NCBI GenBank assembly: GCA_002269645.1
Contig: NIVC01001407.1
Coordinates: forward strand, 1 to 64,000
DNA: 64,000 nt
Direction: 5' to 3'
Source: Macrostomum lignano
Taxonomy: Eukaryota
Part shown: in pieces, positions 5,821 to 58,561 of the stretch
How the letters are laid out: each line of letters opens with the position of its first letter
Position numbering within the stretch: the first letter of the stretch is position 1
Notes under the pieces: model-generated
The model's input: the letters and a program-made list of their open reading frames with translations, nothing else
Database searches by the model: none
What the model was told of the DNA's origin: nothing
Program-made: the position numbers and the translations under genes

Positions 5821-6449
5821 TGGTACAAAAATTTAGTTTTGATTATATCCTTGGGAATACTCAAAGGAATTTTCAATTTCAACAGTCAAATAATATCAAA
5901 AACCTTTTTATTCTATCACATCAACAACATAATAGATATGGTGGCTTGATTAAAAGTACAAAAAGAACTATAGTGATCCCTACGCCTAATGCTGAATGGG
6001 TTCATAGGGCGGTTATCCAGTGTAAATTGTTAACAATAGAGTTCCGCCAGTATTCAGGAATGCCCCATAATCTCTGCTATGAGCAGGCAGTATTGCTAGG
6101 CCATGACTATATAGTCTCTCTCTATATATAGTATATTATGTAGTTTCCGTAAGCCCCAGCTTTGAGTCCCTTACAGCCCTCCTGGTCCTGCTTGACGACT
6201 AAACTCATGTATTATTAATAACTTGGAGTGCTTGAGTGGCAGTTGGGATGGTTGGGAAAAGAGTAGAGAGGTAGGCAGTGAGGGCAGAGCTAGGAAAATG
6301 AGTTGGTGGACTAGCAGGTAACTCTCAGGCAGCTTCAAGGCAGTCTTGATCTATATATCTATAACAGATTTATTAAAAAATTTAGCATATACGCTGCGTA
6401 TACAGTAACACAGCGGATACAGAGGGTTACTGCCTATATTGTGGCATTA

Positions 6450-22865: not shown

Positions 22866-23609
22866 GTTTTCTACAAAAATAGCTATAGAATGTTCCTTCA
22901 AAGGACTTCTTAACCTCTTGATAATACATGCACGTTTAAGGCGACATATGGTCAATTTAGTGTTTCAAAAGAAGAAAAGTAATTCCCAACTCGATTATGC
23001 ATTTTTGCCTACAATTAAATTGCACGATCAGCGATCGCTAAGCGTCCTACTACAGTTGCTCATGATTAACAGCCCATATAGCTGTAAGTTTTTAATTGTG
23101 CTAGCATTTAGGCCTGTTTAAGTCATCACTGCAACACCTACCTTCCATTCTCCTCTCTTCTCTCATACCTACTGCACTCTATTTGTCAAAAGTTGGCCAT
23201 TCCATTTCTAAAGAAACAATTTGCACTTGCTATGCCGAGCACGCAGCCACAGTCAGCTCTCATTGTTTAACTCAGCAGAGCTCGCAGCATCCCACTGCTC
23301 CTGCATCTCTCACCCCGCTGAGCAGAGCAGCTGCCGGACCCCCTGGCACCCAATCAGGTCTCAAACACAGCCGCTGGGTCAGAGAAGAGAATCGGCCTCA
23401 GTCCATTTAAACAAATTTCTCTGCACAGGGAGAGCTCAGAGATTTCAGTCCGTGACAGAGGGACTTTTGCTGCTGCTGCTGAGCTGGCAGGCGAATTCGC
23501 TTGAAGAAGAGCAAAGCACTCAGCTTGAAGCCGTGTGGAACAGCTGCGGCAGACAGCAGATCGGCAGAGAAGCACTGCTAGGAGAAGCAGTGTAGCCATA
23601 GCAACAGAG

Positions 23610-26600
23610 ATGGAGCGGAAGCTGAGAGCGACGCTGGAGGCTGGAGACAGCGAGGAGCTGCAGCGACTGTGCGGTGAGGTCGGCAGCAACATCGAGCTGG
23701 AGGTGGGCGGGTTCGACAAGCAAGACTTTCCTTTTGAAGAGCTTCGCAAAATGCCGCTGGTCCATCACGTGGCCTGCAAGCCGGTGAGATTGTCGTGCCT
23801 GGAGCTACTGATTGACAGATTCGGACCCGGCTGTCTGAAATACAGAAATGGTAGGAGTTATGGTGAGACTCCAGTGCAATTGGCAGCACAGCATCAGGAC
23901 GAATCTTGGATGAAGCTGGTTAAAGAGAAGGGAGGCAGAGACTGCTTGAGAATTGTCGATGGATCGGGACGGACAGTCGCTCACTTTGCTGCTTTAAACA
24001 AAAAAAGCAACTCTTGTCTGAAGTGGCTGGTGAAGGAGGTCGGCAGCGACTGTCTCACAGTTCCTGACGAATACGGTGACACGGCCGTCCATTTGGCCAC
24101 TCAGCATCAGGGCATCGAGTCGCTGGAGTGGATCAAGAGACAGATCGGAACTAACTGCTTTCGGCTAAAGGGACTGTGTGATAGAACAGCATTTCACTTT
24201 GCTGCTCAGAAGTTTGACAACTCAAATCTGAAGTGGCTGGTGAAGGAGCTCGGCAGCGACTGTCTCACAGTTCCTGACAGATTCGGTCACACGGCCGTCC
24301 ATTTAGCCGCTCAGCATCAAAGCATAGAGTCACTGGAGTTGATCAAGAGACACATCGGAACTAACTGCTTTCGGCTAAAGGGACAGTGTAACAGAACAGC
24401 ATTTCACATTGCTGCTCAGAAGTCTGACAATTCAAATTTGAAGTGGCTGGTGAATGAGCTCGGCAGCGACTGTCTCACAGTTCCTGACAAGTACGGTGAC
24501 CCAGCCGTCCTTTGGGCCGCAAGGTGTCAGCCAGTCGACTCTCTTCAGTTCATTTTTGACCGAATCGGAGCCGAAATGTTCAGCTTGAAGTACATGAAAG
24601 GCGAAACACTGGTTGATGCTGTTGAGAGTGATCCGTGCCGCACAGACCGGTCAGCAAAGCGGGCCTGGATTTCCTCCACGCAACGGCGGCTCGAAGCCTC
24701 TCGGCCTCCCGCTGGCAGCTCAGCGCCGACTGCCGCCTCAGCTGGGTGAGTCCTGACCACAGATACTAAAATAACTACATGGGCCACTCAGGCACATATA
24801 CACGTATACTTCATAAAACAGCTTTCTACTTTAGTTCAGTAGCAAAAAAGAATACATAAGCCATTTTACGGCTCGTATATAAATAAAGGCAGCTGAAATG
24901 ACTTTGATAAGTTAAGGAGCTTAAGGAACTTAAACAACTTGCTAATTGGTTCAGCAAAAATGTACATTACCCAGTCCACTGAAATGTACATGCATGACAG
25001 GATTAGGATGGAATTCCGAGAAAGGCATTAAAAACTGGGGCGGGCCGGGGCCGGGAGGGGAGGGGGTAAGGTGGAAAGACGCGATTGGAGGATTTAAGCT
25101 GAGGGAGGGGTAAGAGCCAATAAAATGAGACTTAAGTTTAAAAATGTGCATTAAAATGCTTCTGTTTAACTTGCTACTAAACTGAAAGTAGCAAGTTAAA
25201 CAGAATGTCCTGAGTGGAGCATCTAGTTATTCTACGAGTAGAATCCGTTGTCCTGACTGAGAGATGCTGTCTGACACTGAAATACTGAAATATTTTTGGC
25301 AAAAATTCATTTTGCTTTGATGATCGGCGCCCTGAAGTTCTCATGGCGCCGCAATCTCCCATGACGCCACCCAAAGCTTAATCTGCAGGAGCTTTTTATG
25401 CACGATGCAGTGTTCAAATGCTGTCTTGGCGACCTAGACATGTTTAAAAGTCTCACTCGTAAAACGCTTCCTACAGCGCTGCAGCTCCGCGTCCCCGCCT
25501 GCGAGCTCGGGAGCGCGTCCAGCCCCCTGGGCCGACTCCGGCATCGGAGGTCGGACTGCCTGACAAGACCCGGTGAGTCCGCGCTGAAAATATGAGCGGC
25601 AGTTGATGACGGTTGAAGGTGAGTGACGAAGAAGGGTGGTGACGCAGAAGGCTGACTGACTCAAAAGTACTCAGGAAGCCCCAAGTAACACAAAATTTAT
25701 CCAATTCCTTCACCTCATGTTTTCAGCGCCAAGAAGCAGCTGGACCCCAGCTTCACCGACTGGGACTTCATCCTGCACAAAAACAAGAAGCAGCTCATGG
25801 GCCGTGGTGGATTCGGAAAGGTGTACAAGGTCGTCACAGACCGAAATCAGACGGTGGCTGTCAAGGTGCTGCCCCTGAGCGGCACCGGCCAATCGGGGAA
25901 GCTGCAGAAAGCTGTCGAGATGGAGAAGCGGGGAGTTGAGATCCTCAAGCGACTCTCGCATCCCAACATTGTGCAGTTCCTCAAGTGCGAGCATAAGTCG
26001 GATGGGCTGTACATCTTCACAGAGCTGGTCTCGGGTCACAGCCTCCTTGAGCTGATGCAGCGTCAGAACAAGCCGTTTAAGGAGTCCGGGGTCAGGGACT
26101 TCTCCAGACAGGTGTGTCTCTGGGTTCTTTGGGATTGCTTGGCATGTATGGGATCAGTGTGGGATCAATGTGGGATCAGTGTGAGATCAGTGTGGGATTA
26201 GTGTGGGATCAGTGTAGGATCAGTGTGGAATCAGTGTGGTTGAGATCCAAAATGAATTGATCCGATTTTATGATTGCTCAAAACTGCTCCACCCGCAGAT
26301 CTGCTCAGGCCTGAACTTCCTGCACTGCCAGCAGCGGGGCGCCATCTTGCACCGTGACATCAAGAGCTCAAACGTGATGCTCACCAACGAGGGCGTCATC
26401 AAGCTGATCGACTTCGGTCTGGCCAGGGAGATCTTCAACACCTGCAGCCTGAGCGCAGGCAACCAGCCAAAAGGCACCTGGCACTTCATGGCGCCCGAGA
26501 TGCTCATGGGCGAGGGCAATTCGATTCCGTACTCAGCCAAGACCGACGTGTGGGCCTTCGGCTGCACCGTGTATGAGCTGACGACCATGCAGCCTCCTGA

Positions 26601-26784
26601 CGGCAACGAGCCGCAGCAGCGCATCGTCATCCTGAGATACGGAGAGCGGGCGATGCCTCGGATTGCGGACGGGTTCTCAGCCGGCCTGAAGGACTTCTAC
26701 CTCAGGTGCGTAGACTATGACCCGAGGAAGCGAGCGGACACCGCGGAGCTGCTGCGGCACAGCTTCCTGAGTGCCTCATCGTGA
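23610..26784 (+). CDS. Ankyrin-repeat + Ser/Thr kinase fusion protein, copy A (~700 aa; MAP3K19/YSK4-like STE kinase domain)
   Basis: Exons 23610-24745, 25477-25572, 25727-26111, 26299-26784 (2103 nt, open frame). Exon 1 has ~8-9 35-aa ankyrin repeats. Kinase motifs: GRGGFGKVY, VAVK, HPNIVQF, HRDIKSSNVML..EGVIKLIDFG, GT..FMAPE, DVWAFG. The apparent stop of the ankyrin ORF lies inside the donor GG|GTGAGT. Confidence 0.88.
26149..26237. repeat. 11-bp repeat (GTGGGATCAGT)n in kinase intron of copy A (shorter in copy B, ~35375-35410)
   Basis: Direct reading; copy number differs between paralogs. Confidence 0.9.
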
Positions 26785-26858
26785 CTGCGAGAGCGATGCG
26801 CTGTGAGGGAGCGGAGCGACTCTTGAAGCGGGCGGTTTTGCTTGCTGACGTTGTCTGT

Positions 26859-27212
26859 TTTTGTTTATCCGATTGCTATTTTTGTTTATCTGATCGTACT
26901 TTTGTTTATCTGATCGTACTTTTGTTTATCTGATCGTACTTTTGTTTATCTGATCGTACTTTTGTTTATCTGATCGTACTTTTGTTTATCTGATCGTACT
27001 TTTGTTTATCTGATCGTACTTTTGTTTATCTGATCGTACTTTTGTTTATCTGATCGTACTTTTGTTTATCTGATCGTACTTTTGTTTATCTGATCGTACT
27101 TTTGTTTATCTGATCGTACTTTTGTTTATCTGATCGTACTTTTGTTTATCTGATCGTACTTTTGTTTATCTGATCGTACTTTTGGTTATCTGATCGTACT
27201 TTTGTTTATCTA
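26859..27212. repeat. 20-bp minisatellite (TTTTGTTTATCTGATCGTAC)n
   Basis: Homogeneous 20-bp period just 3' of the copy A stop. Confidence 0.97.
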
Positions 27213-27592
27213 ATTACATCTTTTGATTAATCAACTGTTTTTGATTTTAATTTCAACTGAAATTTTAATTTTATATATTTGACTGCCCCTGGGCTTGTTT
27301 TACCGGTTGCTCTTTCCAATTAATGAGACATTTTTTTGCTGACTCGAGTGCTATTCCAGTAAACTCCGGCACAAGGCCAATCACAATTTCCCCAATCTGC
27401 TCAGACTGCTCAATGCCGACTCCAGATTTTCTGTTGCCGAGAATTTTTCACATTTTTCAGCCACCGGTTTGGCGCTTTTCCGGCTCTGATTTTTGTATTT
27501 GATTTTTGGACTGACTTTTTATTAGCAACTGTTGGAGCAGGAAGTCCAGTGCTTACTCAAAATTTCTCAGTTAAATATACAGCCACCGTTTG

Positions 27593-27815
27593 GCTTGCCG
27601 TGACCCGTGGTGTCCTGACTTGCCGTGACCCGCTGTGTCCTGACTTGCCGTGACCCGCTGTGTCCTGACTTGCCGTGACCCGCTGTGTCCTGACTTGCCA
27701 TGACCCGCTGTGTCCTGACTTGCCGTGACCCGCTGTGTCCTGACTTGCCGTGACCCACTGTGTCCTGACTTGCCGTGACCAGCTGTGTCCTGACTTGCCG
27801 TGACCAGCTGTGTCC
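27593..27815. repeat. 25-bp minisatellite (TGCCGTGACCCGCTGTGTCCTGACT)n
   Basis: ~9 copies. Confidence 0.95.
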
Positions 27816-28516
27816 CATTTCATATTTCAATATTTCGCAGCATCATTTCTGAGCCCCACTCAGTCCAATGCACAGAACAGGTGGGAAGGCAGAGCTGATG
27901 AAGCAGGAATGCAGTGAAGCTGGCCATTGTTTTCAAAGGGCTTGCAGAGTGTCATGAGGTCTGAGGCTGCCTCACGGCTCGGCCCCTCACGCAGTGAGCA
28001 GGAGATGTGCAGAGCCCTTAACTGCACATACGCTGCAGAGCTGCTCCAGTTGCCATGGCAACGGGGGAGACTCGAGCTCGGAGAGACACAGAGAAGTCTG
28101 TGGACAGCTGAGCAATCTGCTCACCTGGAGGCTGGGTGGTACGGCTTGTTGCTTCATCTGCACAAAAGGGAGTTCGAACGAGCATCAGCCATTCTGTGCA
28201 TCTCTTTTGAACAGCTGATGCTGCATCAATGATGCTGGCAGACACTTGAGTCTGTGCTCACTCAGTGCACTGTGCAATGTGCATAAATAATTGTTTGCAG
28301 TGGCTTCGCATTGCATTGAACTGAGACAATGGCGGGGCATGAGGGCTGCTCAGCCACCTCAGCGGGGCGCCGCTGTTTTGAGCAGGAAATGAGAATAAAA
28401 CCGCATTTCTGATTTTATTTGGACCGAACTTGGTGGGAAACACTGTTGAGACTACTCTAGGTAGCAGAGTATGGTTTTAGACTGAATGCACACTTGCCGT
28501 GTTAGATATGGCTGTG

Positions 28517-28690
28517 TCCTGTTAGACATGGGAGTCTCCTGTTAGACATTGGAGTCTCCTGTTAGACATGGGGGTCTCCTGTTAGACATGGGAGTCTCCT
28601 GTTAGACATGGGAGTCTCCTGTTCGACATGGGAGTCTCCTGTTAGACATGGGAGTCTCCTGTTCGACATGGGAGTCTCCTGTTAGACATG
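28517..28690. repeat. 20-bp minisatellite (CCTGTTAGACATGGGAGTCT)n
   Basis: ~8 copies. Confidence 0.93.
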
Positions 28691-28747
28691 AGAGTCTTCT
28701 GTTAGGGATAGGCATGCAGCCAGATCTGCATGCCTATCCCAAGCCTT

Positions 28748-29163
28748 TGTGTCTGGCTCTGTGTCTGGCTTTGTGTCTGGCTCTGTGTCTGGCTTTGTGT
28801 CTGGCTTGGTGTCTGGCTCTGTGTCTGGCTTTGTGTCTGGCTTGGTGTCTGGCTTGGTGTCTGGCTTTGTGTCTGGCTTGGTGTCTGGCTTGGTATCTGG
28901 CTCTGTGTCTGGCTTTGTGTCTGGCTTGGTGTCTGGCTTGGTATCTGGCTTTGTGTTTGGCTTGGTGTCTGGCTCTGTGTCTGGCTTTGTGTCTGGCTTG
29001 GTGTCTCGCTCTGTGTCTGGCTTTGTGTCTGGCTTGGTGTCTGGCTTTGTGTCTGGCTTTGTGTCTGGCTCTGTGTCTGGCTTTGTGTCTGGCTTTGTGT
29101 CTGGCTCTGTGTCTGGCTTTGTGTCTGGCTCTGTGTCTGGCTCTGTGTCTAGTGTTTGGCTCT
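28748..29163. repeat. 12-bp minisatellite (GTGTCTGGCT(T/C)(T/G))n
   Basis: 12-bp period; gives CLAL/SGFV/DTKP pseudo-ORFs. Confidence 0.96.
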
Positions 29164-29784
29164 GCCTGACAGTGCCTGAATGGAAAAAAGTCACCTTACC
29201 TTACCTATGTTACAGACTACAGGAATTACCGACAGCAAAAGCTCGGCTATACGTTTACGTGAGAAATGCCACCAGTTCCTTGTGCTCTAAAAGTGCAATT
29301 TAGACGCTGTAAAATCGTTCAATCAAACAAATAAAAAGTGACGTCATGACGTCATGACGTCGAGCAACAGGCCATCATTGAGCAGTGCTTTGAGCAGAAA
29401 TGCGTTGATGTGCCGGATGTCAGCTTCGGCAACAGGGAGGGTCTGTCGTTATGCCAGGTGTGTTTCAGTTGCTGCTTTTTTTCTCCGCTGTTGCTGCTTT
29501 GTTTCTCCGCTGTTGCTGCTTTGTTTCTCCGCTGTTGCTGCTGTTTTTCTTTGCTGTTGCTTCTTCCGCTGTTTGTTCTTCTCCCGTCTCCTCTTCTCCT
29601 CTTCCCTTTTCCCTCTTTCCCTCCTCCCATCTTTCTCTCTTCCATGCTTAAGGAATGAAATTCTCTTTTTTAGCTGTTTCATTAGCAATTTTTTCTTTGT
29701 CCATAAATTTTTTCTAGACAAATGTTACTGGCTGTTTAACCATACATTTGCTTCAAATGAAATCTGCGTGCGAGGCCTTACTGT

Positions 29785-29880
29785 CTAAATACACCATCAC
29801 AGACAGGATTGTCACCATCACAGACAGGATTGTCACCATCACAGACAGGATCGTCACCATCACAGACATGATTGTCAGCA
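29785..29880. repeat. 21-bp repeat (CACCATCACAGACAGGATTGT)n
   Basis: ~4 copies. Confidence 0.85.
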
Positions 29881-29937
29881 ATTACCAGAAAGTTTCAAAG
29901 ATTCTCAAGAAATTTCAAAAACGCTTTGTGACAACAT

Positions 29938-30360
29938 AAAGGTCAAGGGTCGTGCGGAAATTGCTAAGAGATCAAAGGTCAATGGGGAATTGCTGAGAGT
30001 TTATGGGTCATGCAGGAATTGCTGAGAGGTCAAAGGTCATGCGGGAATTGCTGAGAGATCAAAGGTCATGCGGGAATTGCTGAGAGTTTATGGGTCATGC
30101 GGGAATTGCTGAGAGATCAAAGGTCATGCGAGAATTGCTGAGAGATCAAAGGTCATGCAGGAATTGCTGAGAGATCAAAGGTCAATGGGGGAATTGCTGA
30201 GAGATCAAAGGTCATTGGGGAATTGCTGAGAGGTCAAAGGTCATGCGGGAACTGCTGAGAGATCAAAGGTCATGGGGGAATTGCTGAGAGTTTAAGAGTC
30301 ATGCGGGAATTGCTGAGAGGTCAAAGGTCATGCGAGAATTGCTGAGGGGTTAAGGGTCAG
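29938..30360. repeat. ~29-bp minisatellite (GAGATCAAAGGTCATGCGGGAATTGCTGA)n
   Basis: ~14 moderately diverged copies. Confidence 0.93.
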
Positions 30361-31239
30361 TGACTTCAATGCAAGGCTCTAAAGTCGAACCCCAGGTTTG
30401 CTCAATTTGTCTTCTGTCATTCTCAAAAATCTGTTCGAGGATGCCGTCTCAATCTCAAAGTCTGACTTCATGACGTGTCTGTTAAACTTCTGCCATGATA
30501 CAGCTTAGCGTCACCGGCTGTGTTTTGCTGTAATTGCTTTACTATTATAGGATGAGCTGTGCTTCTAAGATTAGAATCTTAGCTCTAGGCTTCATTAATG
30601 GGCTTAAGATTACAATTTGATTCTCGAATCTCTGTTGGACTACCTGGCCTCGGCAGAGATCGAATTCCGGCAGGCAGGTGAGCAAAGCCAGCACCCGTCT
30701 GGAAAAATGAACTTTTGTGTATAATTTTGAATAATTAAGATTGATATCGTTTGAGACAGCCTATTTATGGCCAGTAAAATACAATTATTTTAATTTTTGT
30801 GGCATGTAAACCTTTTGCTCAGAGTGATTCGGTACAGAACTGTCTACTTAATGATTCAATCATGTAATCATGTCTTCTACTAAACAGCATAGCTCATGTT
30901 TCCACGAATTTTTCATTTAATTCAGAAATATTTCACATCCTGGTTTTACAGCAGCTGCAATGCTCAGCTGCCTCGGCTTTGAGCACTCTGGGAGGCAGAT
31001 TTCTAAGAAGCTGAAAGCACGAGTCATAGTTTTTATTGTATTCTCAAGTTCGTATGCTGTCAGCTCAAATAGCACCCGTATTTTTAACTTGCAATGAATG
31101 ACAATGAATTGAAATCAAATGTGATTGGTATTTCAGTGCAATAATTTTGTGTGTTATTCCCATTTGAACTAAGAATATTAAGGATTCTGTAGCTCAGTTT
31201 GTCAGTGGAGTTGCTGGTAGGTTATGACCGTGGGCGCAA

Positions 31240-32280
31240 TGATCCTACTACTGACATAATTAGCTACAGACCAATTAGTTTAGCCTCTTGCCTGTGTAAA
31301 CTCTATGAAAAGGTAATGGCAAGAAATCTGCTAATCATAATTGAAAACAAAGGAATAATCAATGCAGACCATTGTACATTCGACAATATGTTGCGACTCT
31401 CAGATGATGTGCTGGAAATACTCCAGGCTTAAAAACAATATCATTGACGTCATCATGTGTCTTTGATGGCGTCTGGCAGACATTGGTCAGAATATAGTTC
31501 CCAGTTACCTTGACGACAGGGAATTCGAATTCAGGTAGGTGGAGCTGTCAGCGAAGCCTTCAAGTCGGCTGCTGGCGTTACTCTCAAGGTGGGGTGTTGT
31601 CTCGACTCCTCTTCATTGTGCTTGTCAGCTCGATAGAGACTCAATGGCTGCTTCATCACCTAGAAAAAGTGGCTGGGTGACGTTTGCATCACTATCAATC
31701 CAGCGAAAAGCAAGCCTGTCTCTTTAAGTTTAAAGGAAATCACGCACATCACAGGTCTTGATAAGCCGTCCATCAAACCTGGTCAGGAAGACATCCAATA
31801 CTTTGATTCTGCTGTCTTCCTAGATGTACTCAACTTTATCCAGAACGGCTGGCATCACAATGCCCAGGCTCAACTCAATAAGAAGGATCGCTCGGAGTAC
31901 CAGGATCGCCCAACTTAACTTGCGCTCAGACTGATTCACGGGTCTTACATTGAGAGCGGCATTACATACTTCATTATTAACTTCAGGTCCTCCAAAACCG
32001 GACGCTCAGGATTTCCCTTGATGCGCCTAAGTACACTAAAATCAGCTACTTACTGCATGATTCCAGCAAGATGCCCAGGTTTAAAGAGGGAATATGGATC
32101 CTGGTTAAAATATGGCATAAAAAAGTCACAAAAGGGTTCCATAGCTTTGACCTCAAAGATTGGAGCAGGCCGCCGACCATAGAGTCCCTGCTACCACCAA
32201 ACTCAGAAGAGCCATGAATAACTTGAAATATTGATCTCAGGACCTCGCTGGGGATATAGGCCTCCTCCCAGCTTCCCAAA
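31240..32280 (+). mobile_element. Degenerate non-LTR retrotransposon (LINE) reverse-transcriptase fragment
   Basis: SYRPISLASCLCKLYEKVMA at ~31260 and QGGVLSRLLFIV at ~31575 (the GVPQGSVLSPLLF motif); many stops and frameshifts; boundaries approximate. Confidence 0.75.
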
Positions 32281-32667
32281 CATTGCCTCTTTCAAGACTC
32301 ATACTGACTACAATGAAAAATACCCCACTTATATTATTTGTTTGGCTAATCACCCCATATTTCTCTTTGCACTGTAGCGCGTAAACAGTTTTTTACACCT
32401 CTAAAATATTTGTATTAGTAATCATTTTTCGTTTGTATTGTTGAATTGTTTTAATTTTTTTAATTGCTTAAAATTGATTTACTTTTACACCTGCCTCCAG
32501 CTCTTTTTGCGAGTGCTTTTTACTCCTGTCCTCCTTTCCTCTAATATTTATTACTTGAATTGCCATTACTCCTGCAATATTTATTTCGCTTTGTCTAACT
32601 CGGGAATCGGAAATTTTACAATCAAATTCAAACGAAAATTACAGAAAATATTAGCAGAAGAGCCCGG

Positions 32668-32748
32668 AAACCTGTTAGATACTGATGTCACCTGTTAGAT
32701 ACTGATGTCTCCTGTTAGATACTGATGTCTCCTGTTAGATACTGATGT
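32668..32748. repeat. 20-bp repeat (CCTGTTAGATACTGATGTCT)n
   Basis: ~4 copies. Confidence 0.88.
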
Positions 32749-33354
32749 AAAGTGTCAGTGGCAAACCCAAGCGGAATTTTCCATTCATTTGAATTCAGCA
32801 ACAGAAAAATCCTGAGTCAAGCATTTTCAGCAAAATATTTGCCATGCATCTCATCTGCAAACTAAATTAAAAATAATCACAGAACTCTGCTTGAATCAAG
32901 GCCTCAGCCCTGCCCTACCTCCCCTCTCCATCTCTCTCTCCTCGTATCTCAGCTGCCGCCCCTTCACCCCTGCCCACTGACAATGCACTTGCTATGCCGA
33001 GCACGCAGCCACAGTCAGCTCTCATTGTTTAACTCAGCAGAGCTCGCAGCATCTCACTGCTCCTGCATCTCTCACCCCGCTGAGCAGAGCAGCTGCCGGA
33101 CCCCCTGGCACCCAATCAGGCCTCAAACACAGCCGCTGGGTCAGAGAAGAGAATCGGCCTCAGTCCATTTAAACAAATTTCTCTGCACAGGGAGAGCTCA
33201 GAGATTTCAGTCCGTGACAGCGGGACTTTTGCTGCTGCTGCTGAGCTGGCAGGCAAATTCGCTTGAAGAAGAGCAAAGCACTCAGTTTGAAGCCGTGTGG
33301 AACAGCTGCGGCAGACAGCAGATCGGCAGAGAAGCGCTGCTAGGATAAGCCAGC

Positions 33355-35933
33355 ATGGGGAACGCTTGGAGTGTATCCATGGAGATGGAGCGGAAGCTGA
33401 GAGCGACACTGGAGGCTGGAGACAGCGAAGAGCTGCAGCGACTGTGCGGTGAGGTCGGCAGCAACATCGAGCTGGAGGTGGGCGGGTTCGACAAGCAAGA
33501 CTTTCCTTTTGAAGAGCTTCGCAAAATGCCGCTGGTCCATCACGTGGCCTGCAAGCCGGTGAGATTGTCGTGCCTGGAGCTGCTGATTGACAGATTCGGA
33601 CCCGGATGTCTGAAATTCAGAAATGGTAGGGGTGAGACTCCAGTTCACTTAGCAGCCCAGCATCAGGACGAGTCTTGGATGAAGCTGGTTAAAGAGAAGG
33701 GAGGCCGAGGTTGCTTGAGAATTGTCGATAGATGGGGAAAGAGAGTTGCTCACTTTGCCGCTGGGAACAGAAAAAGCAACTCTTGTCTGAAATGGCTGGT
33801 GAAGGAAGTCGGCAGCGACTGTCTCACAGTTCCTGACAAAGATGGTAACATGGCGGTCCATTTGGCCGCTCAGCATCAGGGCATCGAGTCGCTGGAGTGG
33901 ATCAAGAAACAGATTGGAACTGACTGCTTTCGGCTAAAGACAAAGAGTGATAGAACAGCATTTCACATTGCTGCTCAGAAGTCTGACAATTCAAATCTAA
34001 AGTGGCTGGTGAAGGAGCTCGGCAGCGAGTGTCTCACAGTTCCTGACAGAGACGGTGACACGGCCGTCCATTTTGCCACGAAGCATCAGGGCATCGAGTC
34101 ACTGGAGTGGATCAAGAGACAGATCGGAACAGACTGCTTTCGGCTAAAGTCAAACAGTGGTACAGCATCATTTCATTTTGCTGCTCAGAAGTCTGAAGGT
34201 TCAAATTTGGAGTGGCTGGTGAAGGAGCTCGGCAGCGACTGTCTCACAGTTCCTGACTGTTGGTGCTGTGACACGGTCGTCCATTGGGCCGCTCAGCATC
34301 AGCCAGTCGACTCTCTTCAGTTCATTTTTGACCAAATCGGAGCCAAAATGTTCAGCTTGATGAACATGTGGGGCAGAACACCGGCTGATGCTGTTGAGAG
34401 TCGGCGGTGCCACACAGACCGGTCAGCAAAGCGGCAATGGATTTCCTCCACGCAGCGGCGGCTCGAAGCCTCTCAGCCTCCCGCTGGCAGCTCAGCGCCG
34501 ACTGCCGCCTCAGCTGGGTGAGTCCTGACTGAGAGCTGCTGCCTGACACTCAAAATGAGAATGAGTAGAAAAAATGATGCGGTAAATTTCGAGTAGCTTA
34601 AAGATCGTTATACTTTCATTCTACTCTTTAAGTCATTTAAGTCATCGTACTCAGGTCGAATTTAAGTACAAATTTAGCAAAATCCCTCATACATTTTCCC
34701 TCATTCGCCCCCACAGAGCTGCAGCTCCGCGTCCCCGCCCGCGAGCTCGGGACCGCGTCGAGCCGCCGCCTGGACCGACTTCGGCATCCGAGGTGGAACC
34801 GCCTGAGGAGACTCGGTGAGTCCGCGCTTAAAATATGGTGGCACAGAATGGTGGGGACGCAGAAGGGTGGTGACGCAGAAGGCTGAGTGACTCCAAAGTA
34901 CTCAGAAAGCCCCAAGCCACACAAAATTTAACGAATTCCTTCACCTCATATTTTCAGCGTCAGGAAGCAGCTGGACCCCAACTTCACCGACTGGGACTTC
35001 ATCCGGCAGGACAACAAGAAGCAGCTCATCGGCCGTGGTGGATTCGGCAAGGTGTACAAGGCTCTCACAGACCGCAACCAGACGGTGGTGTCAAAAAATT
35101 ACCACTGAGCCATGCGAGGCAAGCTGCAGGGAAACTGAAGATAATTCTGATGGAGAAGCGGGGAGTTGAGATCCTCCAGCGATTTTCACATCCCAACATT
35201 GTGCAGTTCCTCAAGTGCGAGCAGAAGTCGGATGGGCTGTACATCTTCACCGAGCTGGTCTCGGGTCACAGCCTCTTTGAGCTGATGCAGCGTCAGAACA
35301 AGCCGTTCAAGGAGTCCGGGGTCAGGGACTTCTCCAGACAGGTGCGTGTCTGGGCTCTCTGGGATTGTGTGGCATGGGATCAGTGTGGGATCAGTGTGGG
35401 ATCAGTGTGTTGGCATCCAAAATTAATAGTTGCAACTTTATCTGCAGATCTGCTCAGGTCTGAACTTCCTGCACTGCAATCTGGAGGGCGCCATCTTGCA
35501 CCGGGATATAAACTGCAACAACGTGATGCTCACCAACGAGGGCGTCATCAAGCTGATCGACTTCGGTTTGGCCAAGGAGGTCGGGAAGAGCAGCGGTCTG
35601 AGCACAGGCTTCGGTCCAAAAGGCACCACCTACTTCATGGCTCCGGAGCTGTTCGACATAGAAGTCCAATCACTTCCGTACTCAGCCAAGACCGACGTGT
35701 GGGCCTTCGGCTGCACCGTGTATGAGATGACGGCCATGCAGCCTCCTGATGGGGACAAGCCAAGTGAAAGTATTAACATTCGAAGATTGATGAAGCAGGA
35801 GATGCCTCGGATTGCGGACGGGTTCTCAGCCGGCCTGAAGGACTTCTACCTCAGGTGCGTAGACTATGACCCGAGGGAGCGAGCGGACACCGCGGAGCTG
35901 CTGCGGCACAGCTTCCTGAGTGCCTCATCGTGA
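33355..35933 (+). pseudogene. Ankyrin-repeat + kinase gene, copy B; 1-bp deletion in the VAVK codons (pseudogene, truncated ~470-aa product, or assembly indel)
   Basis: Exons 33355-34517, 34717-34815, 34958-35341, 35448-35933, with the same intron positions as copy A. GTG G-T GTC (35085-35092) versus GTG GCT GTC in A gives a premature TGA at 35106-35108. Catalytic loop reads HRDINCNN. Confidence 0.8.
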
Positions 35934-37329: not shown

Positions 37330-40300
37330 TCACGCAGAGTCAACGGACTCCAGAAACACCAGCTGCTCAAAAGGAAACGCAGCCGACATCTGATTGCCAG
37401 TGAGTCTCTGCAGACCCTGCGACTTCACCGAGTAGGACGCGTCCAAATTCTTTTTGAGGAAGCTGTACACCTCATCGTAGCTGAAGCCGTTGAGCTCAGC
37501 GGCATGCCGGCACTGATCCCGCAGCTTCTGCAGCATCGTCTCCCGACCCTCCCGGCCAAACACCCGCTCGGTGGCGACGTCTGTCCGGTTCTCGAAGGTT
37601 CTTTCAAGCCGGCCGCCGCGGGTGCCGCCGAGGCCACCGCTGCCGAGTGCACCGTCCAGCTCCTTAGCGAATTTCAGCGTCACCTGGACGTTGTCTTCGT
37701 CGTCGTCTTCGTAGTCGTCGAAGTCGTCTTCGAAATCGGCCATGGCCTGTTTTTGGGACAATGGAGGCGGTTCGCAATCAATGTTTGTGGACTAGTTACA
37801 TTGTCGAAAGTGTACACTCATCAATATGCTAAATTTTCCATCCTGAAACCAGGTAGACCTGACTGTAGCTACATGTATAACCTCATGTAAAAGATGTAAA
37901 TAAAATGAAATCAAATGTAAATGTAAAAGATGTAGATGTAAGAATTTTTTTACTTTTTCATTGCCGATTAGATAAAAAAATTAAATGTCATTTTGTTTTG
38001 AAATTTGACACTATTAAATGACATCAGTTTCTTTTAATTTGTTAGAATTTTTTGTCAGAATGGTTTGAAATGGTTCAATCTCGCCTCTTTCCTCAATCGC
38101 GCACTCCACCCCTCCTTTCTAGATAAGACAAGGAGGCGAGATTGAAGAGCCAATCAGAAGGCAGCGATGGATAGAGAGAGAGAAAAATAACAAGACTGAA
38201 CCAGACAGATACGGAGACTCGAGAGAAATAGAGTAAACAGAGACAAGTGCAGATGAACTAAAAAATGACTAAGACAGTCGTGACAGGTCCTGTACATATT
38301 TGGAAACTATCGAAAATTTTCTGCCGATTTTCTAAAAATTTTGATGTTCCCCGGGCCCCGTTTTTTGGGGAGTGTCGATTTCATATCTCTATGACTTATC
38401 ACCAATAATTCTACGCTATAAAGTTCTATGCTATTCTATGCTATGCTATATAAAGTGACTAAAATCAAAATTAGTCCAGCACCTGATAGTAGGTGTCAGC
38501 CAGCTCTTCATTCTCCATGGCGGCCTCTTTAAAACTGCCAGCCCTATTCATCTGCTGATAGAGGTCAATTTTCATCGGCGTGATGGGCCGCTCGTCTCTG
38601 CTTGAAGCCACGGCAGTTGGCCGAGTCGGCTGCCGTCGAGCCAGACTGGCCGGCACCAGATCGTCTTCCTCGTCGCTGTCATCCCCGTCATTGCCGTAAT
38701 AGTCTTCTTCAGAATCTCGGCGACCTTCATTGTGGCGAGGCTCGTAGTCATGCGACTCCCAAGCGGTGTGCTTCTGCTGTTGCCTCTGCTGCTGCTGCTC
38801 CTCCAAGAAGCGTTGGTTCCGCACTGGCAGGTCGTCTTGCGGCTGAGGAAACGCCGTTCTGCCTTCGCTGCCGCTCGGTCGAAAAGTCCGATTGCCGAAC
38901 TTCTTAGCCAGCTCGGCGTTTCTACGGCTCGTCTCGGCGGCCTGTGTGGCCAGCTCTCTGGCGCGGTCGTCTGCCTCGCGTTGCTTTCGCAACAGCATCT
39001 TCTGGTGCGGGCTGAGGGCATTGAAGTCTCCACCGGCCTGGCCGGGTCCCTTGACCTTCTGCCGTACCGTGTCGCTGTTGGGCTTCAGAGTGACTTCAGC
39101 GGCAGCCGCTGCGGCCGCCGCCATCGCTCGGGATTCGAACTCCAGACTGTTGAGCGTTGGTTTCTCCTGCAGCACGGATAGTAGGTTTTTGCTTTCGGCT
39201 TCGTTGATTGTCTCCTCCATCAGCAGCTGTTGCTGCCGGTTGCCACCGCTCTGAGACTCAACAGCCTCGCGCAGGCTCTGCATCTGCTCGCGTATGAACG
39301 GCTCTTTGAGCACCTCTCTGGCGCTGAGTCGGTCCTGCGGATCTTTGGCTAGCATCTTCTCCAGAACCGCCTGCAGCTCGGGAGGGTAGCGGTCTGGGAT
39401 CACCGGGCAGGGGTTGCCACAGATGCTGAACAGAATCCCCATCAGACCAGCGCCTTTGAATGCGTGCTCCAGGGCGCACATCTCGTATAGAATGCAGCCG
39501 ACACTCCAAATGTCGCTTTTGGCGTTGTAGCCTGGAACAGGTCGGGGCGGGTGGGAATAGAGAATGAATTTGGGTGAGAGTAGAGAATGAATGGAGGTGA
39601 GAATAGAGAATGAATGGGATGAGAATGGAGAATGAATGGAGGTGAGAAAAGAGAATGAATGGGGGTGAGAATAGAGAATGAATGGGAGTGAGAATAGAGA
39701 ATGAATGGGAGTGAGAATAGAGAATTAATGGAGGGGAGAATAGAGAATGAATAGAGGTGAGAATAGAATGAATGGGAGTGGGAATAGAGAATGAATGGGG
39801 TGAGAATAGAATGAATGGGAGTGGGAATAGAGAATGAATGGGGTGAGAATAGAGAATTAATGGAGGTGGGAATAGATAATGTATGGGAGTGAGAATAGAG
39901 AATGAATGGGAGTGAGAATAGGGAATGAATGGGAGTGAGAATAGAGAATGAATGGGAGTGAGAATAGAGAATGAATGGGAGTGAGAATAGAGAATGAATG
40001 GGAGTGAGAATAGAGAATGAATGGGAGTGAGAATAGAGAATGAATGGGAGTGGGAATAGAGAATGTATGGAGGCGAGAATAGAAAATGAATGGAGGTGAG
40101 AATAGAGAATGTATGGAGGTGAGAATAGAGAAAGAATAGAGGTAAGAATAGAGAATGAATGGGGAAGTAGATGGCACGCCGCAGATCTCCCCAGCTCACC
40201 CTCATGCTTGAGCAGTTCCGGACTCATAAAGTACGGCGTGCCAAGAAAAGTTGACGCCATATCGGAGTTGCTCATCAGCACCCTCGAGATGCCAAAGTCG

Positions 40301-41454
40301 CCAATTTTCACTGTGCCACTTTTCAAAAATATGTTTTTAGTTTTCAAATCTCTGTGCAAAATTCGTCGACCGTGCAAATAGTCAACGCCTAGTAGGATTT
40401 GGATGAACCATCGGATGGTGGTTTGCACCGGTAGGTTGTGTCCTGCCTGTTTCAGACGGCTGATGCACTGGTCCAGGTCGCCTTCGTCGCAGTACTCGGT
40501 CACGATGCAAAACGACGGCGGCTCTGCGTTGTTTTTGTCGAAAAAAGAATCAATAAAAATCGGAGGCCACAAGTGGACAGTCAAATTCTACTTTCAAGGT
40601 CACTTAAGGCGGAATCATTTTCAACGTAATTAAGCGGAAATTTCTTTCAAGGTCACACAAGTGAAAACCATCCTACTTTCAAGGTCGCTTAATAGGAAAT
40701 CCTATATTCTTTCAAGGTCGGTTACCGGAAAATTCTACTTTTAAGGTCAACTTTACTGGAAAGCCTTTACTTTCAAGGTCGCTCAACGGGGAATCCTACT
40801 TTTAAGGTCGCGCAACGGAATTCCTGACTCCAAGGTCGCTCGACGGAAAATCGTACTTTCAAGGTCACTTAGCGGGAAATCCTAGCTCGTACTTTCAGGG
40901 ACACAGCGAAAATCCATCCTTAGCTACTTTTAATTTCACTCAAAAGAGAATCCTCACTTTCAAGGTCACTTAATGGAAAAGTCCACCCATGATGTCATCA
41001 AATGAAAAAATCTCACTTTCCATGCTACTGAATGGCGAGGAAATCCTACTTATAAGATTGCCCAACGGGAATCCCGATTTCAAGGTCACCGGTTTGTAAA
41101 ATTTACTGCCACGAGGAATCCCAATCTTTTTTCAGGGAAAAGTTGTTTTTAAAGGAAAACAAATACTTAATGAGCCAACCTACCCATAAAACAATTGTAA
41201 AACTTCAGAATAGCTGAGTGATCAAGCTTTCCAAGCAGCTTGGCCTCGTGCACAACTTCCAGAGTTTCATCCGGGTCAACTTCACCAATTTGAACTTCTT
41301 TCAGCACTTTGAATTTCTCTTCCGAGCTGCGCAAATCTTCAACAAGGTGCACCGTGCCGAAAGCGCCTTTGCCAATTTGGCGAACCACGCGATAGCGGTT
41401 GCTAAGGACGCGAGTCTTCGGCGTCTGGGTTGTGTCGGTTGTTGCAGTGGACAT
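37330..41454 (-). CDS. NEK11: NIMA-related kinase NEK11 (~686 aa)
   Basis: Exons (minus strand) 41454-41184, 40523-40200, 39531-38483, 37746-37330; 2061 nt with consistent phases. Motifs: GKGAFGTVHLV, KVLKE..IGEVDPDET, FCIVTEYC, WFIQILLGVDYLH.RRILHRDLKTKNIFLK, GTPYFMSPE.LKHEGYNAKSDIWS; C-terminal ..YDEVYSFLK...FEQLVFLE as in NEK11. Confidence 0.92.
39553..40168. repeat. 23-bp minisatellite (GAGAATAGAGAATGAATGGGAGT)n filling NEK11 intron 2
   Basis: 23-bp period; occupies ~92% of the 668-bp intron. Confidence 0.96.
40586..41090. repeat. Old degenerate ~29-bp tandem array with conserved core CTACTTTCAAGGTC(A/G)
   Basis: ~15 diverged units in NEK11 intron 1; core retained, flanks variable. Confidence 0.8.

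Positions 41455-42993: not shown

Positions 42994-58561
<15,568 letters not shown>

What the first reader, a model, noticed from the sequence alone, without database searches (positions are those of the whole stretch)
23840..34420. Paralog divergence is concentrated on the ankyrin ligand-binding surface (natural DARPin-like hypervariability)
Seen: the first 77 residues from MERKL are identical in A and B, the ~360 bp upstream differ at only about six positions, and helix-2/linker frameworks (LKWLVKE.GSDCLTVPD, IESLEWIK.QIGT.CFRLK) are nearly invariant. Yet nearly every beta-hairpin changes radically: RSYGET/R--GET, GSGRT/RWGKR, EYGDT/KDGNM, GLCDRT/TKSDRT, RFGHT/RDGDT, GQCNRTA/SNSGTAS, KYGDPAVL/CWCCDTVVH, KYMKGETLV/MNMWGRTPA. 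Post-helix-1 positions also change (ALNK/AGNR, AQH/TKH, ARC/AQH). Knowledge: these are the x positions of the DxxGxTPLHLAAxxG consensus that form the binding face and are randomised in DARPins. Inference: diversifying selection on ligand specificity, as in an innate-immune, allorecognition or gamete-recognition sensor coupled to a kinase. This is the best candidate here for an undescribed system.
Basis: partly seen in the sequence, partly recalled or inferred. Interest (0 to 1): 0.88.

Follow-up and report, generated by a model that had tools for sequence, protein, structure and literature searches.

The report
Hypervariable ankyrin-kinase gene pair, flatworm
Two neighbouring genes of the flatworm Macrostomum lignano encode a cytosolic ankyrin-repeat array fused to a kinase, and the array's ligand-binding positions change faster than neutral while its framework stays almost fixed, which marks an undescribed candidate recognition-receptor family.

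Summary
The window is Macrostomum lignano. It holds two tandem paralogs, A at 23610-26784 and B at 33385-35933. Each encodes about 8 long (35-aa) ankyrin repeats, a Pro/Arg-rich linker exon and a C-terminal STE-group Ser/Thr kinase.

Within the ankyrin exon, 30 of 64 a-priori binding-surface codons differ, against 33 of 203 framework codons (p=2e-6). Surface dN/dS is 1.9, framework 0.45, and local dS is the same in both classes.

Across 26 repeat units from 10 family copies, a fixed-sites codon model gives omega 2.4-4.7 at the surface positions (p=1e-3 to 3e-5) and about 0.5 for the framework. Both checks hold: one on the other repeats of the array, one without the window's own copies.

- The identical first 77 residues belong to a 1.7%-divergent tract that includes non-coding flank. 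It looks like recent homogenisation, not a selective contrast.
- The kinase half is more diverged than the ankyrin half, and it is a mosaic of segments shared with other paralogs.
- Copy B carries a 1-bp deletion in the kinase exon that may be an assembly error.

The proteins have no signal peptide or membrane segment, so gamete-surface recognition is unlikely. The closest analogue is the highly internally conserved repeats of fungal NLRs. An immune role is untested.

The parts
23222..23609 (+). Copy A: 5' flank shared with copy B (putative promoter/5'UTR)
   Evidence: Aligns to 32984-33384. Six substitutions in 359 bases up to 23580, then an indel and scrambled patch at 23583-23606. Together with codons 1-77 it forms a 1.7%-divergent tract.
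23610..24745 (+). Copy A: ankyrin exon (378 codons + 2 bases, phase 2 donor GG|GTGAGT)
   Evidence: Pfam Ank_2/Ank_4/Ank_5 hits. AlphaFold pLDDT 83, above 90 for most of residues 90-340. Foldseek matches ankyrin solenoids. TRF finds a 210-bp unit at 24017-24515. Hairpin codons (T-6..T-1 of each repeat): 23850-23867, 23955-23972, 24063-24080, 24168-24185, 24273-24290, 24378-24395, 24483-24500, 24588-24605.
25477..25572 (+). Copy A: Pro/Arg/Ala-rich linker exon (32 codons, phase 2 to 2)
   Evidence: AG/GT bounded and in frame. Present in P0002, P0003, P0006-P0008. Skipped in P0001, P0004, P0005, P0010.
25727..26111 (+). Copy A: kinase exon 1 (G-loop GRGGFGKVY, VAVK, helix C)
   Evidence: Pfam Pkinase E=8e-18; gene model.
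26299..26784 (+). Copy A: kinase exon 2 (HRDIKSSN, DFG, APE) with stop codon
   Evidence: Pfam Pkinase E=2e-34. Best solved relatives are SLK, STK25 and ASK1, E about 1e-36 to 1e-34.
32984..33384 (+). Copy B: 5' flank shared with copy A. Contains an in-frame ATG at 33355 (MGNAWSVSMEMERKL)
33385..34517 (+). Copy B: ankyrin exon
   Evidence: Open reading frame, 82% identical to A. TRF 210-bp unit at 33786-34257. Hairpin codons: 33619-33636, 33724-33741, 33832-33849, 33937-33954, 34042-34059, 34147-34164, 34255-34272, 34360-34377.
34717..34815 (+). Copy B: linker exon (33 codons)
   Evidence: In frame, one codon longer than in A.
34958..35341 (+). Copy B: kinase exon 1, with a 1-bp deletion between 35088 and 35089 (VAVK motif) and a resulting stop at 35106-35108
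   Evidence: A reads ACGGTGGCTGTCAAG and B reads ACGGTGG-TGTCAAA. The syntenic copy L1b has the intact GGTGGCTGTCAAA in a segment with 3 substitutions in 625 aligned bases. The public model P0001 ends at the same stop.
35448..35933 (+). Copy B: kinase exon 2 (HRDINCNN, DFG, APE) with stop codon
   Evidence: Pfam Pkinase E=2e-32. The last ~150 bp are almost identical to A, while the activation-loop and alpha-G patches are highly diverged.

Best explanation
A and B are tandem members of a large gene family found so far only in Macrostomum lignano. Each protein is cytosolic. It has a short N-terminal region, an array of unusually long (35-aa) ankyrin repeats built from a 70-aa double unit, a low-complexity linker and a C-terminal STE-group Ser/Thr kinase.

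Shown here:
- The repeat framework is kept nearly identical, both between repeats of one protein and between paralogs.
- Exchange between copies and changes in unit number are frequent: gain or loss of double units and mosaic tracts.
- The residues of the beta-hairpin tip and the last turn of helix 1 (positions 2, 3, 5 and 13 of each repeat, plus 1 and 4 of every second repeat) accumulate replacements faster than synonymous changes. That is positive diversifying selection on the canonical ankyrin binding groove.

Inferred:
- Each paralog's groove binds a different protein ligand.
- Binding localises or activates the attached MAP3K/STE20-like kinase, so the family is a repertoire of intracellular recognition modules wired to phosphorylation signalling.
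- Whether the ligands are non-self (pathogen or selfish-element proteins) or rapidly evolving endogenous partners is open.
For: Architecture and identity:
- Intact 700-aa GT-AG gene model for A, matching public full-length proteins.
- Pfam Ank and Pkinase hits. AlphaFold pLDDT 83 with ankyrin-solenoid Foldseek matches: Espin1-AR at TM 0.76, ankyrin-R/B, DARPins and the RNase L sensor.
- The kinase is closest to SLK, STK25 and ASK1, and all catalytic motifs are present in A.
- No membrane segment or signal peptide.

Selection:
- A vs B: surface dN 0.36, dS 0.19, omega 1.9. Framework omega 0.45. Surface dN exceeds ankyrin-region dS with p=0.0028.
- In 26 units, the 12 a-priori columns hold 107.5 of 193.5 nonsynonymous changes but only 11.5 of 68.5 synonymous ones. 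None of 100000 random column sets reaches that.
- ML fixed-sites model: omega 4.7 (p=2.6e-5) for the x positions and 2.4 (p=9.5e-4) for x plus tips. The synonymous-rate ratio is 0.8-1.3.
- Cap-side repeats, a separate set of codons: omega 2.1, p=0.0066. Without A and B: omega 4.1, p=7.6e-4.

Concerted evolution and turnover:
- Units are 84% identical within a protein. Framework columns are 90% identical and hypervariable columns 34%.
- Paralogs carry 2-5 double units. B lacks a unit that its syntenic counterpart L1b has.
- Divergence is regionally heterogeneous, and kinase-loop versions are shared in different combinations among paralogs.

Distribution: all relatives down to about 32% identity that could be named are M. 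lignano, in at least 15 clusters at 50% identity.
Against: - The selection tests use repeat units from one species' paralogs and no population or orthologue data. They also assume a single NJ tree, although the units clearly recombine.
- The class holds only 12-16 codons, so there are few synonymous sites.
- The most recent comparison, B vs L1b (dS 0.07), shows only 4 surface replacements and omega 0.82 there. Diversification is therefore not demonstrably ongoing.
- Some hairpin versions recur among paralogs (DSRGDT, DKDGDT, KTKCDRT, KGDDDRT, three times each). Part of the diversity is reshuffled rather than newly made.
- No ligand, expression, or infection data exist, and no literature was found.
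- Copy B's reading frame is interrupted as assembled.
Confidence: 0.6

Rival explanations
1. There is no adaptive diversification. The hairpin and helix-1 positions are simply unconstrained, while gene conversion and purifying selection hold the framework fixed, and the contrast only looks like selection.
For: Non-framework positions vary most in any ankyrin family. Conversion is clearly active here. The tree-free parsimony test at local synonymous sites is only moderately significant (omega 1.7-2.1, p=0.02-0.03). Recombination can inflate LRTs.
Against: Relaxation gives an omega of at most 1. Four estimates, which partly share data or ancestry (share most repeat units), give 1.9-4.7, each rejecting 1. 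Synonymous rates at the same codons equal the framework's (ratio 0.8-1.3; 17% of synonymous changes in 17% of columns). So conversion homogenises these codons as much as their neighbours.
Confidence: 0.17
2. The A-B hairpin differences were mostly imported ready-made, by exchange of whole repeat units or short tracts with other paralogs. They did not arise by substitution in A or B since their duplication. Selection, if any, acted elsewhere in the family.
For: - In the unit tree, B_u1 groups with L1b_u1, L3_u2 and the L7b units, not with A_u1.
- A_u2 and L1a_u1 share the rare framework variant LELIKRHIG at different array positions. A vs its syntenic counterpart L1a has dS 0.185, three times the flank divergence.
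- B and L1b differ by one whole double unit.
- Kinase-loop versions are shared in mosaic fashion.
Against: This explains where the variants came from, not why nonsynonymous change exceeds synonymous change at these codons across the family. Most hairpins are unique: 19 different versions among 23 units for each hairpin. It is compatible with the best explanation rather than exclusive of it.
Confidence: 0.4
3. Copy B is a decaying pseudogene and the A-B differences are decay.
For: - A 1-bp deletion in kinase exon 1 gives a stop at 35106-35108.
- The catalytic-loop Lys is replaced (HRDINCNN).
- The syntenic copy L1b has a TGG-to-TAG nonsense codon in its ankyrin exon.
Against: - B vs L1b shows purifying selection: omega 0.24 in the ankyrin region and 0.18 in the framework.
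- The ankyrin ORF is intact, and differences concentrate on surface codons instead of being spread evenly.
- L1b has the undeleted base in a segment with 3 substitutions in 625 bases.
- Near-identical copies in the public assembly differ mainly by small indels. A single-base deletion may therefore be an assembly error.
- HRD(I/V)N also occurs in intact paralogs (P0009, P0013, P0017).
Confidence: 0.1
4. The arrays are substrate- or scaffold-targeting domains. After whole-genome and tandem duplication they partitioned endogenous partners of an ordinary signalling kinase. They have nothing to do with non-self or conflict.
For: Ankyrin-kinase fusions such as ILK, TNNI3K, DAPK1 and RIPK4 are ordinary signalling proteins (my own knowledge). 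Little hairpin change has occurred since the latest split. No immune context is visible in the window: a flippase, a NEK-like kinase and a kinesin exon.
Against: Omega above 1, unit-number turnover, tandem arrays, disabled copies and restriction to one lineage with at least 15 subfamilies are the usual marks of families in an arms race. They are not the marks of stable subfunctionalisation.
Confidence: 0.25

Closest known systems
Highly internally conserved ANK/TPR/WD repeats of fungal NOD-like receptors (Podospora NLR/HNWD genes; Dyrka et al. 2014, PMC4986451)
   Same: Repeats within a protein are about 85% identical. Repeat number varies between copies. A handful of positions per repeat are hypervariable, under positive selection, and lie on the concave hairpin/inner-helix face. 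Concerted evolution proceeds by repeat reshuffling within and between paralogs. The proteins are intracellular.
   Different: No NACHT or NB-ARC domain. The repeats are N-terminal and the effector is a C-terminal STE-group kinase. The unit is a 70-aa double repeat. The host is an animal, and that paper finds only 0.8% of metazoan repeats to be this conserved internally.
DARPin libraries (designed ankyrin repeat proteins)
   Same: A quasi-invariant consensus framework carries variable residues at positions 2, 3, 5 and 13 of each repeat. The randomised DARPin positions 2, 3, 5, 13, 14 and 33 are from my own knowledge of Binz et al. 2003. PMC8683736 confirms the concept of a fixed framework with a randomised paratope. 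Foldseek matches DARPins.
   Different: This is natural, not designed. Repeats are 35 aa, not 33. Positions 14 and 33 are conserved. In every second repeat the canonical D1 and G4 also vary, and hairpin length varies by 1-2 residues. The variant repertoire partly recurs.
RNase L (ankyrin sensor, kinase-like domain, KEN nuclease)
   Same: An N-terminal array of about 9 ankyrin repeats acts as ligand sensor ahead of a kinase fold in one cytosolic polypeptide. It is among the structural matches (4g8k, 4oav). It is a precedent for ankyrin-ligand binding switching a kinase-fold module in innate immunity.
   Different: RNase L binds one small ligand (2-5A), is single-copy and conserved, has a pseudokinase, and ends in a nuclease domain that is absent here.
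ILK and TNNI3K (N-terminal ankyrin repeats + kinase), RIPK4/ANKK1 (kinase + C-terminal ankyrin repeats)
   Same: Ankyrin repeats and a protein kinase in one cytosolic protein. RIPK4 and ANKK1 appear as weak hits (P0038, P0105).
   Different: Those kinases belong to the TKL group (my own knowledge). Here the best solved relatives are STE20/STE11 kinases. RIPK4/ANKK1 have the opposite domain order. None is known as a hypervariable multigene family.

Membership tests
Ankyrin-repeat domain | Significant match to ankyrin repeat profiles | tested here: met
   Ank_2 at E=1.5e-23 and Ank_4 at E=1.2e-22 for A, and similar for B. All are above the Pfam cut-offs.
Ankyrin-repeat domain | Helix-turn-helix/hairpin solenoid fold | tested here: met
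   AlphaFold pLDDT 83, pTM 0.76, with paired helices every 35 residues. Foldseek top hits are Espin1-AR (TM 0.76/0.85), ankyrin-R/B and DARPins, all with probability 1.00.
Eukaryotic protein kinase, catalytically competent | G-loop, beta3 Lys, HRDxKxxN, DFG and APE motifs | tested here: met
   Copy A has GRGGFGKVY, VAVK, HRDIKSSN, DFG and MAPE, with Pkinase E=2e-34. Copy B has HRDINCNN, and its frame is broken at VAVK as assembled.
STE group kinases (STE20/STE11) | Closest relatives among classified kinases are STE members | tested here: inconclusive
   The best solved chains are SLK, STK25/MST and ASK1/MAP3K5 (E 5e-36 to 1e-33), with NEK, PAK and TAO next. This supports the group. The choice between STE20 and STE11 is unresolved, and no kinome phylogeny was made.
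Fungal-NLR-type highly internally conserved recognition repeats | Internal repeat identity of about 85% or more over at least 100 aa | tested here: inconclusive
   70-aa double units are on average 84% identical within a protein (range 74-94%), and 90% at framework columns. This sits on the published threshold. The two halves of a unit are much less alike.
Fungal-NLR-type highly internally conserved recognition repeats | Repeat-number variation between copies or alleles | tested here: met
   There are 2-5 double units among paralogs. B and its syntenic counterpart L1b differ by one unit. True allelic polymorphism was not tested.
Fungal-NLR-type highly internally conserved recognition repeats | Positive selection at positions on the binding face | tested here: met
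   Omega 2.1-4.7 at a-priori surface codons, with p from 0.0066 to 2.6e-5. The positions lie in the loop before helix 1 and in the last turn of helix 1.
NOD-like receptor / STAND | Central NACHT or NB-ARC nucleotide-binding domain | tested here: not met
   Pfam finds only Ank and Pkinase families in A and B. Only a 60-aa low-complexity linker lies between them.
RNase L | C-terminal KEN ribonuclease domain after the kinase-like domain | tested here: not met
   The protein ends 5 residues after the kinase domain.
RIPK4/ANKK1 | Kinase N-terminal, ankyrin repeats C-terminal | tested here: not met
   The order is reversed here. The RIPK4 hit is only 28% identical over 37% of the query.

The most novel reading that the evidence does not exclude
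Macrostomum flatworms have evolved their own intracellular non-self recognition repertoire. It would consist of dozens of tandemly arrayed genes in which a DARPin-like hypervariable ankyrin groove, diversified by positive selection and repeat shuffling, senses pathogen, viral or selfish-element proteins and directly switches on an attached MAP3K/STE20-type kinase. Functionally this would be an NLR analogue without a NOD domain, in a phylum whose innate receptors are poorly known.
Probability: 0.22. Interest if true: 0.85.

Novelty: new variant of a known kind. Interest (0 to 1): 0.62.

Why it matters
Diversifying repeat arrays that serve as recognition surfaces are known from lamprey VLRs, plant and fungal NLRs and bacterial effectors. 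A natural 'consensus framework plus hypervariable paratope' ankyrin array fused directly to a kinase has not, as far as the searched literature shows, been described in an animal.

If the arrays bind different ligands, three things follow:
- The family would be a ready-made natural library of intracellular binders.
- It would show a new way of wiring recognition to signalling, with the receptor and a MAP3K-like kinase in one chain.
- It would give an entry point into flatworm innate immunity or genetic conflict, in a species where RNAi and transgenesis are available.

It is also a clear case of concerted evolution and positive selection acting on the same 210-bp units. The family is restricted to one lineage, with at least 15 subfamilies.

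Tried and rejected
1. I first treated the identical N-terminus as evidence of purifying selection. Rejected: the non-coding flank is equally similar (1.7% over 589 bases, against 12% in the rest of the exon). It is a shared low-divergence tract.
2. I considered calling copy B a pseudogene from its 1-bp deletion. Not accepted: B vs L1b shows purifying selection and L1b has the base. In the public assembly, near-identical copies differ mainly by small indels.
3. The first ML run had an unconverged null model. I repeated it with restarts and two trees, and only the repeat is quoted.
4. An exact look-up of B's ankyrin ORF in public assemblies, to get independent reads of the locus, found nothing.
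5. Literature searches found nothing specific. I searched for the family, for six BOX15 gene identifiers, and for Macrostomum with ankyrin, kinase or immunity.
6. NCBIfam gave only generic bacterial kinase models, far below their cut-offs.
7. I could not map variable residues onto 3-D coordinates, because the model's coordinates are not exposed. I used the DSSP string and the canonical ankyrin register instead.
8. The RT-like ORF between the copies (31199-31432) has no Pfam match at E<=0.001, so it is not claimed as a retroelement.
9. The third kinase in the window (minus strand) is not a family member.

Full report
WHAT IS THERE

[quoted passage not shown] The public protein P0001 is a chimeric gene model. 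It reproduces, residue for residue, the C-terminal part of copy A, the whole ankyrin domain of copy B and even intergenic ORF fragments of this locus.

Two paralogs lie head to tail on the + strand, 9.8 kb apart.
- Copy A has four coding exons with canonical GT-AG borders and consistent phases: 23610-24745 (ankyrin), 25477-25572 (linker), 25727-26111 and 26299-26784 (kinase). They give an intact 700-aa protein.
- Copy B has the same structure: 33385-34517, 34717-34815, 34958-35341 and 35448-35933.
- Pfam finds only ankyrin and protein-kinase families in them.
- Public full-length family members (P0006-P0008 and others) have the same order and the same exon junctions.

THE PROTEIN

AlphaFold models the ankyrin exon of A with an alignment of 13 family sequences.
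- Mean pLDDT is 83 and pTM is 0.76.
- pLDDT is above 90 for most of residues 90-340.
- A disordered loop lies at residues 25-47.
- Helix pairs recur every 35 residues.

Foldseek matches ankyrin solenoids: Espin1-AR at TM 0.76/0.85, ankyrin-R/B, DARPins and the ankyrin sensor of RNase L.

The kinase is closest to STE-group kinases: SLK, STK25/MST and ASK1, at E about 1e-36 to 1e-34. In A it has every catalytic motif (GRGGFGKVY, VAVK, HRDIKSSN, DFG, APE).

There is no hydrophobic segment (maximum Kyte-Doolittle 19-residue mean 1.17) and the N-terminus is hydrophilic. The protein is therefore cytosolic.

CHECKING THE OBSERVATION

- The ankyrin exons are 82% identical as protein, and residues 1-77 are identical.
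- The flank 23222-23580 differs at 6 of 359 positions. Just 5' of the ATG there is an unmentioned 13-bp indel and a scrambled patch.

I fixed a 'surface' class before counting. It holds the positions homologous to the randomised DARPin positions (x33, x2, x3, x5, x13, x14, counted from the conserved Thr of TxxH) plus the five hairpin-tip residues, for all eight repeats: 64 codons. Thirty of these differ between A and B, against 33 of 203 framework codons (Fisher p=2.4e-6).

IS IT SELECTION?

Nei-Gojobori counts for A vs B:
| class | dS | dN | omega |
|---|---|---|---|
| surface | 0.19 | 0.36 | 1.9 |
| framework | 0.17 | 0.076 | 0.45 |

Surface nonsynonymous divergence exceeds synonymous divergence of the whole ankyrin region (p=0.0028). 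The syntenic pair L1a/L1b on locus L001 gives the same numbers (1.9 and 0.44). It shares ancestry with A/B, so it is not an independent comparison.

For more power I fetched seven loci of the public assembly GCA_002269645.1 holding ten more copies. I cut the arrays into their 70-aa double units: 23 units at first, 26 with L1b.

Per-column statistics:
- Ten columns are hypervariable: 2, 3, 5 and 13 of the first repeat, and the equivalents of 1, 2, 3, 4, 5 and 13 of the second repeat.
- Framework columns are 90% identical over all unit pairs. The hypervariable columns are 34% identical.

Parsimony counts on an NJ tree:
- The 12 a-priori DARPin-type columns receive 107.5 of 193.5 nonsynonymous changes.
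- The same columns receive only 11.5 of 68.5 synonymous changes, exactly their share of columns.
- None of 100000 random sets of 12 columns reaches that nonsynonymous count.

I wrote a fixed-sites codon model with these settings:
- GY94-type substitution matrix with F3x4 codon frequencies.
- Fixed NJ topology with proportional branch lengths.
- Free kappa, a free omega per class, and a free synonymous-rate ratio between classes.

Its results:
| data set | surface omega | test against omega=1 |
|---|---|---|
| 26 units, a-priori x positions | 4.7 | LRT 17.7, p=2.6e-5 |
| 26 units, x plus tips | 2.4 | p=9.5e-4 |
| cap-side repeats R1, R2, R7, R8 in ten paralogs (codons not used above) | 2.1 (framework 0.48) | p=0.0066 |
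| 19 units, omitting the window's copies A and B | 4.1 | p=7.6e-4 |

In the 26-unit runs, framework omega is about 0.5 and the synonymous-rate ratio is 0.8-1.3. A tree built from framework columns only gives stronger results.

Because synonymous rates at the hairpin codons equal those of the framework, three explanations fail to account for the excess: conversion from distant donors, misalignment, and local hypermutation.

Caveats:
- All sequences come from one species.
- The units clearly recombine, which can inflate such tests.
- The class contains few synonymous sites.

(i) The identical N-terminus is not a selective contrast to the hairpins.
- The flank plus codons 1-77 form one tract with 10 differences in 589 bases (1.7%).
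- The rest of the exon has 108 differences in 900 bases (12%), p=4e-15.
- Non-coding and coding DNA are equally similar in the tract, so this is most simply a recent homogenisation (gene-conversion) tract. That reading is my inference.

(ii) Divergence is not confined to the ankyrin surface.
- The kinase half is only 79% identical in DNA, with dS 0.28, dN 0.15 and omega 0.55.
- Its divergence is patchy in a different way. Codons 451-480 and 631-660 have both dS (1.6 and 0.74) and dN high. They sit next to blocks with dS near 0.
- The divergent loop versions of B recur in other paralogs, in different combinations. Patch 1 resembles P0011, patch 2 resembles P0007 and P0017, and patch 3 resembles P0009. 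Patches 2 and 3 of A resemble P0012 and P0008. That is the signature of mosaic exchange among paralogs.

(iii) Repeat units turn over quickly.
- Locus L001 is syntenic with the window, with flanks 92-95% identical.
- B lacks one whole double unit that L1b has.
- A vs L1a has dS 0.185, three times the flank divergence. The two share a rare framework variant (LELIKRHIG) at different array positions.
- Paralogs carry 2-5 double units.

(iv) The most recent comparison shows purifying selection.
- B vs L1b has dS 0.07, omega 0.24 in the ankyrin region and 0.18 in the framework.
- It shows only four surface replacements. Diversification is episodic or older than this split.
- Downstream, B and L1b are nearly identical, with 3 substitutions in 625 bases from the linker exon to kinase exon 1. 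This is another sign of exchange.

STATE OF COPY B

B has a 1-bp deletion between 35088 and 35089, in the VAVK motif. It leads to a stop at 35106-35108. P0001 ends at the same stop, but it may derive from the same assembly as the window.

L1b has the undeleted sequence. L1b in turn carries a TGG-to-TAG nonsense codon at L001:21501-21503.

In the public assembly, the 99.7%-identical copy pairs L5a/L7a and L5b/L7b differ mainly by small indels. A single-base deletion is therefore weak evidence. I treat B's frameshift as unresolved, and its ankyrin exon as functional until recently at least.

HOW IT PROBABLY WORKS

Shown:
- An invariant, self-similar scaffold.
- Positive selection on the residues that form the ankyrin binding groove. 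In the model they lie in the loop before helix 1 (for example E154, Y155 and D157) and in the last turn of helix 1 (Q165).
- Unit gain and loss, and mosaic exchange between copies.
- A catalytically complete STE-type kinase in the same chain.
- Cytosolic location.
- Tandem arrays.

Inferred: each paralog's groove binds a different protein ligand, and that binding recruits or releases the kinase. The family would then be a repertoire of intracellular recognition modules coupled to phosphorylation.

Whether the ligands are non-self or fast-evolving endogenous proteins cannot be decided here. Extracellular gamete or allorecognition is unlikely, because nothing would export the protein.

COMPARISON WITH KNOWN SYSTEMS

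[quoted passage not shown] 2014, PMC4986451).
- Shared: about 85% internal identity, repeat-number polymorphism, and about five positively selected positions per ankyrin repeat on the concave hairpin/inner-helix face.
- That paper reports that only 0.8% of metazoan repeats are so conserved internally.
- Different: no NOD domain here, and the effector is a kinase. The family is therefore not an NLR.

The DARPin comparison holds for positions 2, 3, 5 and 13. It does not hold for 14 and 33.

RNase L is a precedent for an N-terminal ankyrin sensor ahead of a kinase fold, but it ends in a nuclease and is conserved and single-copy. ILK, TNNI3K, RIPK4 and ANKK1 combine the same two domains. They differ in kinase group or in domain order.

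DISTRIBUTION AND NOVELTY

- An exhaustive profile-free search of 1.84 billion representatives found 1542 proteins at E<=1e-30.
- Of the 20 top-ranking hits looked up, 15 are M. lignano. They include all the named full-length ankyrin-kinase relatives, down to about 32% identity, and they represent 15 clusters at 50% identity.
- The other five were one anonymous Logan contig (P0136, 36% identity), a bacterial ankyrin-repeat protein (P0133), two unnamed ENA proteins (P0134, P0135) and a generic kinase, the bird PAK3-like protein P0141.
- No paper in the searchable library describes the family.

I rate it a new variant of a known kind of system. The phenomenon (a hypervariable repeat paratope under diversifying selection with concerted evolution) is known. 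This architecture and host are not.

Noticed in passing
window 35088-35108: Copy B has a 1-bp deletion in the VAVK motif of kinase exon 1, giving a stop at 35106-35108. The syntenic copy L1b has the intact base. It is either a recent null allele or an assembly error.
   Followed up: partly
L001:21501-21503: The syntenic counterpart of copy B (L1b) has a TGG-to-TAG nonsense codon in the LEWIK framework of its first double unit, in an otherwise open 448-codon ankyrin exon. It also has one more 70-aa unit than B.
   Followed up: partly
window 33355-33384 and 23583-23609: B has an in-frame upstream ATG giving MGNAWSVSMEMERKL. This is an N-myristoylation-like Gly2/Ser6 start, also seen in P0011 (MGNTRSV...). 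In A the usual MATEMERKL start codon reads ATA, so translation would start at MERKL. The paralogs differ by an indel patch exactly here.
   Followed up: no
window 25477-25572 and 34717-34815: The Pro/Arg/Ala-rich linker exon (phase 2 to 2) is absent from several public family models, which read SAG|AKKQLDP. It is either a cassette exon or an annotation difference.
   Followed up: no
window 23222-23839 vs 32984-33615: The 5' flank plus codons 1-77 of A and B form a 1.7%-divergent tract, against 12% in the rest of the exon. This looks like a recent gene-conversion tract.
   Followed up: yes
window 35481-35552 (HRDINCNN); family proteins P0009, P0013, P0017, P0023: A subset of paralogs, including B, replaces the catalytic-loop Lys (HRDIN.., HRDVNSKN) and shares distinct activation-loop and alpha-G segments. 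This may be a pseudokinase or altered-mechanism subfamily, mixed into the others by recombination.
   Followed up: partly
window 38471-40584, minus strand: An unrelated protein-kinase gene (Pkinase E=1e-27; HRDLKTKNIFL and GTPYFMSPELL, NEK-like by eye). A 23-bp minisatellite (39549-40164) lies within the span of its ORFs.
   Followed up: partly
window 16483-17331 (+) and upstream: Exon of a phospholipid-translocating P4-ATPase (PhoLip_ATPase_C, E=1e-57). The same gene precedes the family pair on locus L001, which confirms synteny.
   Followed up: partly
window 55594-56103 (+): An ORF with a kinesin KIF1B-type domain (E=7e-10).
   Followed up: no
window 1843-5823, 6454-7857, 13631-15360, 46129-48958 and about 30 other arrays: Minisatellite content is extremely high. 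Examples are a 22-bp unit x179 and a 16-bp unit CTTGGTGCTAAAGCCC x177, which also occurs at 6454-7857. Several arrays are shared with L001 at different copy numbers.
   Followed up: no
P0001 (public UniRef model) vs window 24400-35108: The public gene model for this locus is a chimera. It fuses the 3' part of copy A, intergenic ORF fragments and copy B up to the premature stop.
   Followed up: yes
L005 vs L007: Two contigs of the public assembly carry 99.7%-identical copies of another tandem pair. They differ mainly by 1-bp and 16-bp indels that break one reading frame in each pair. They are haplotigs or recent duplicates with indel errors.
   Followed up: partly
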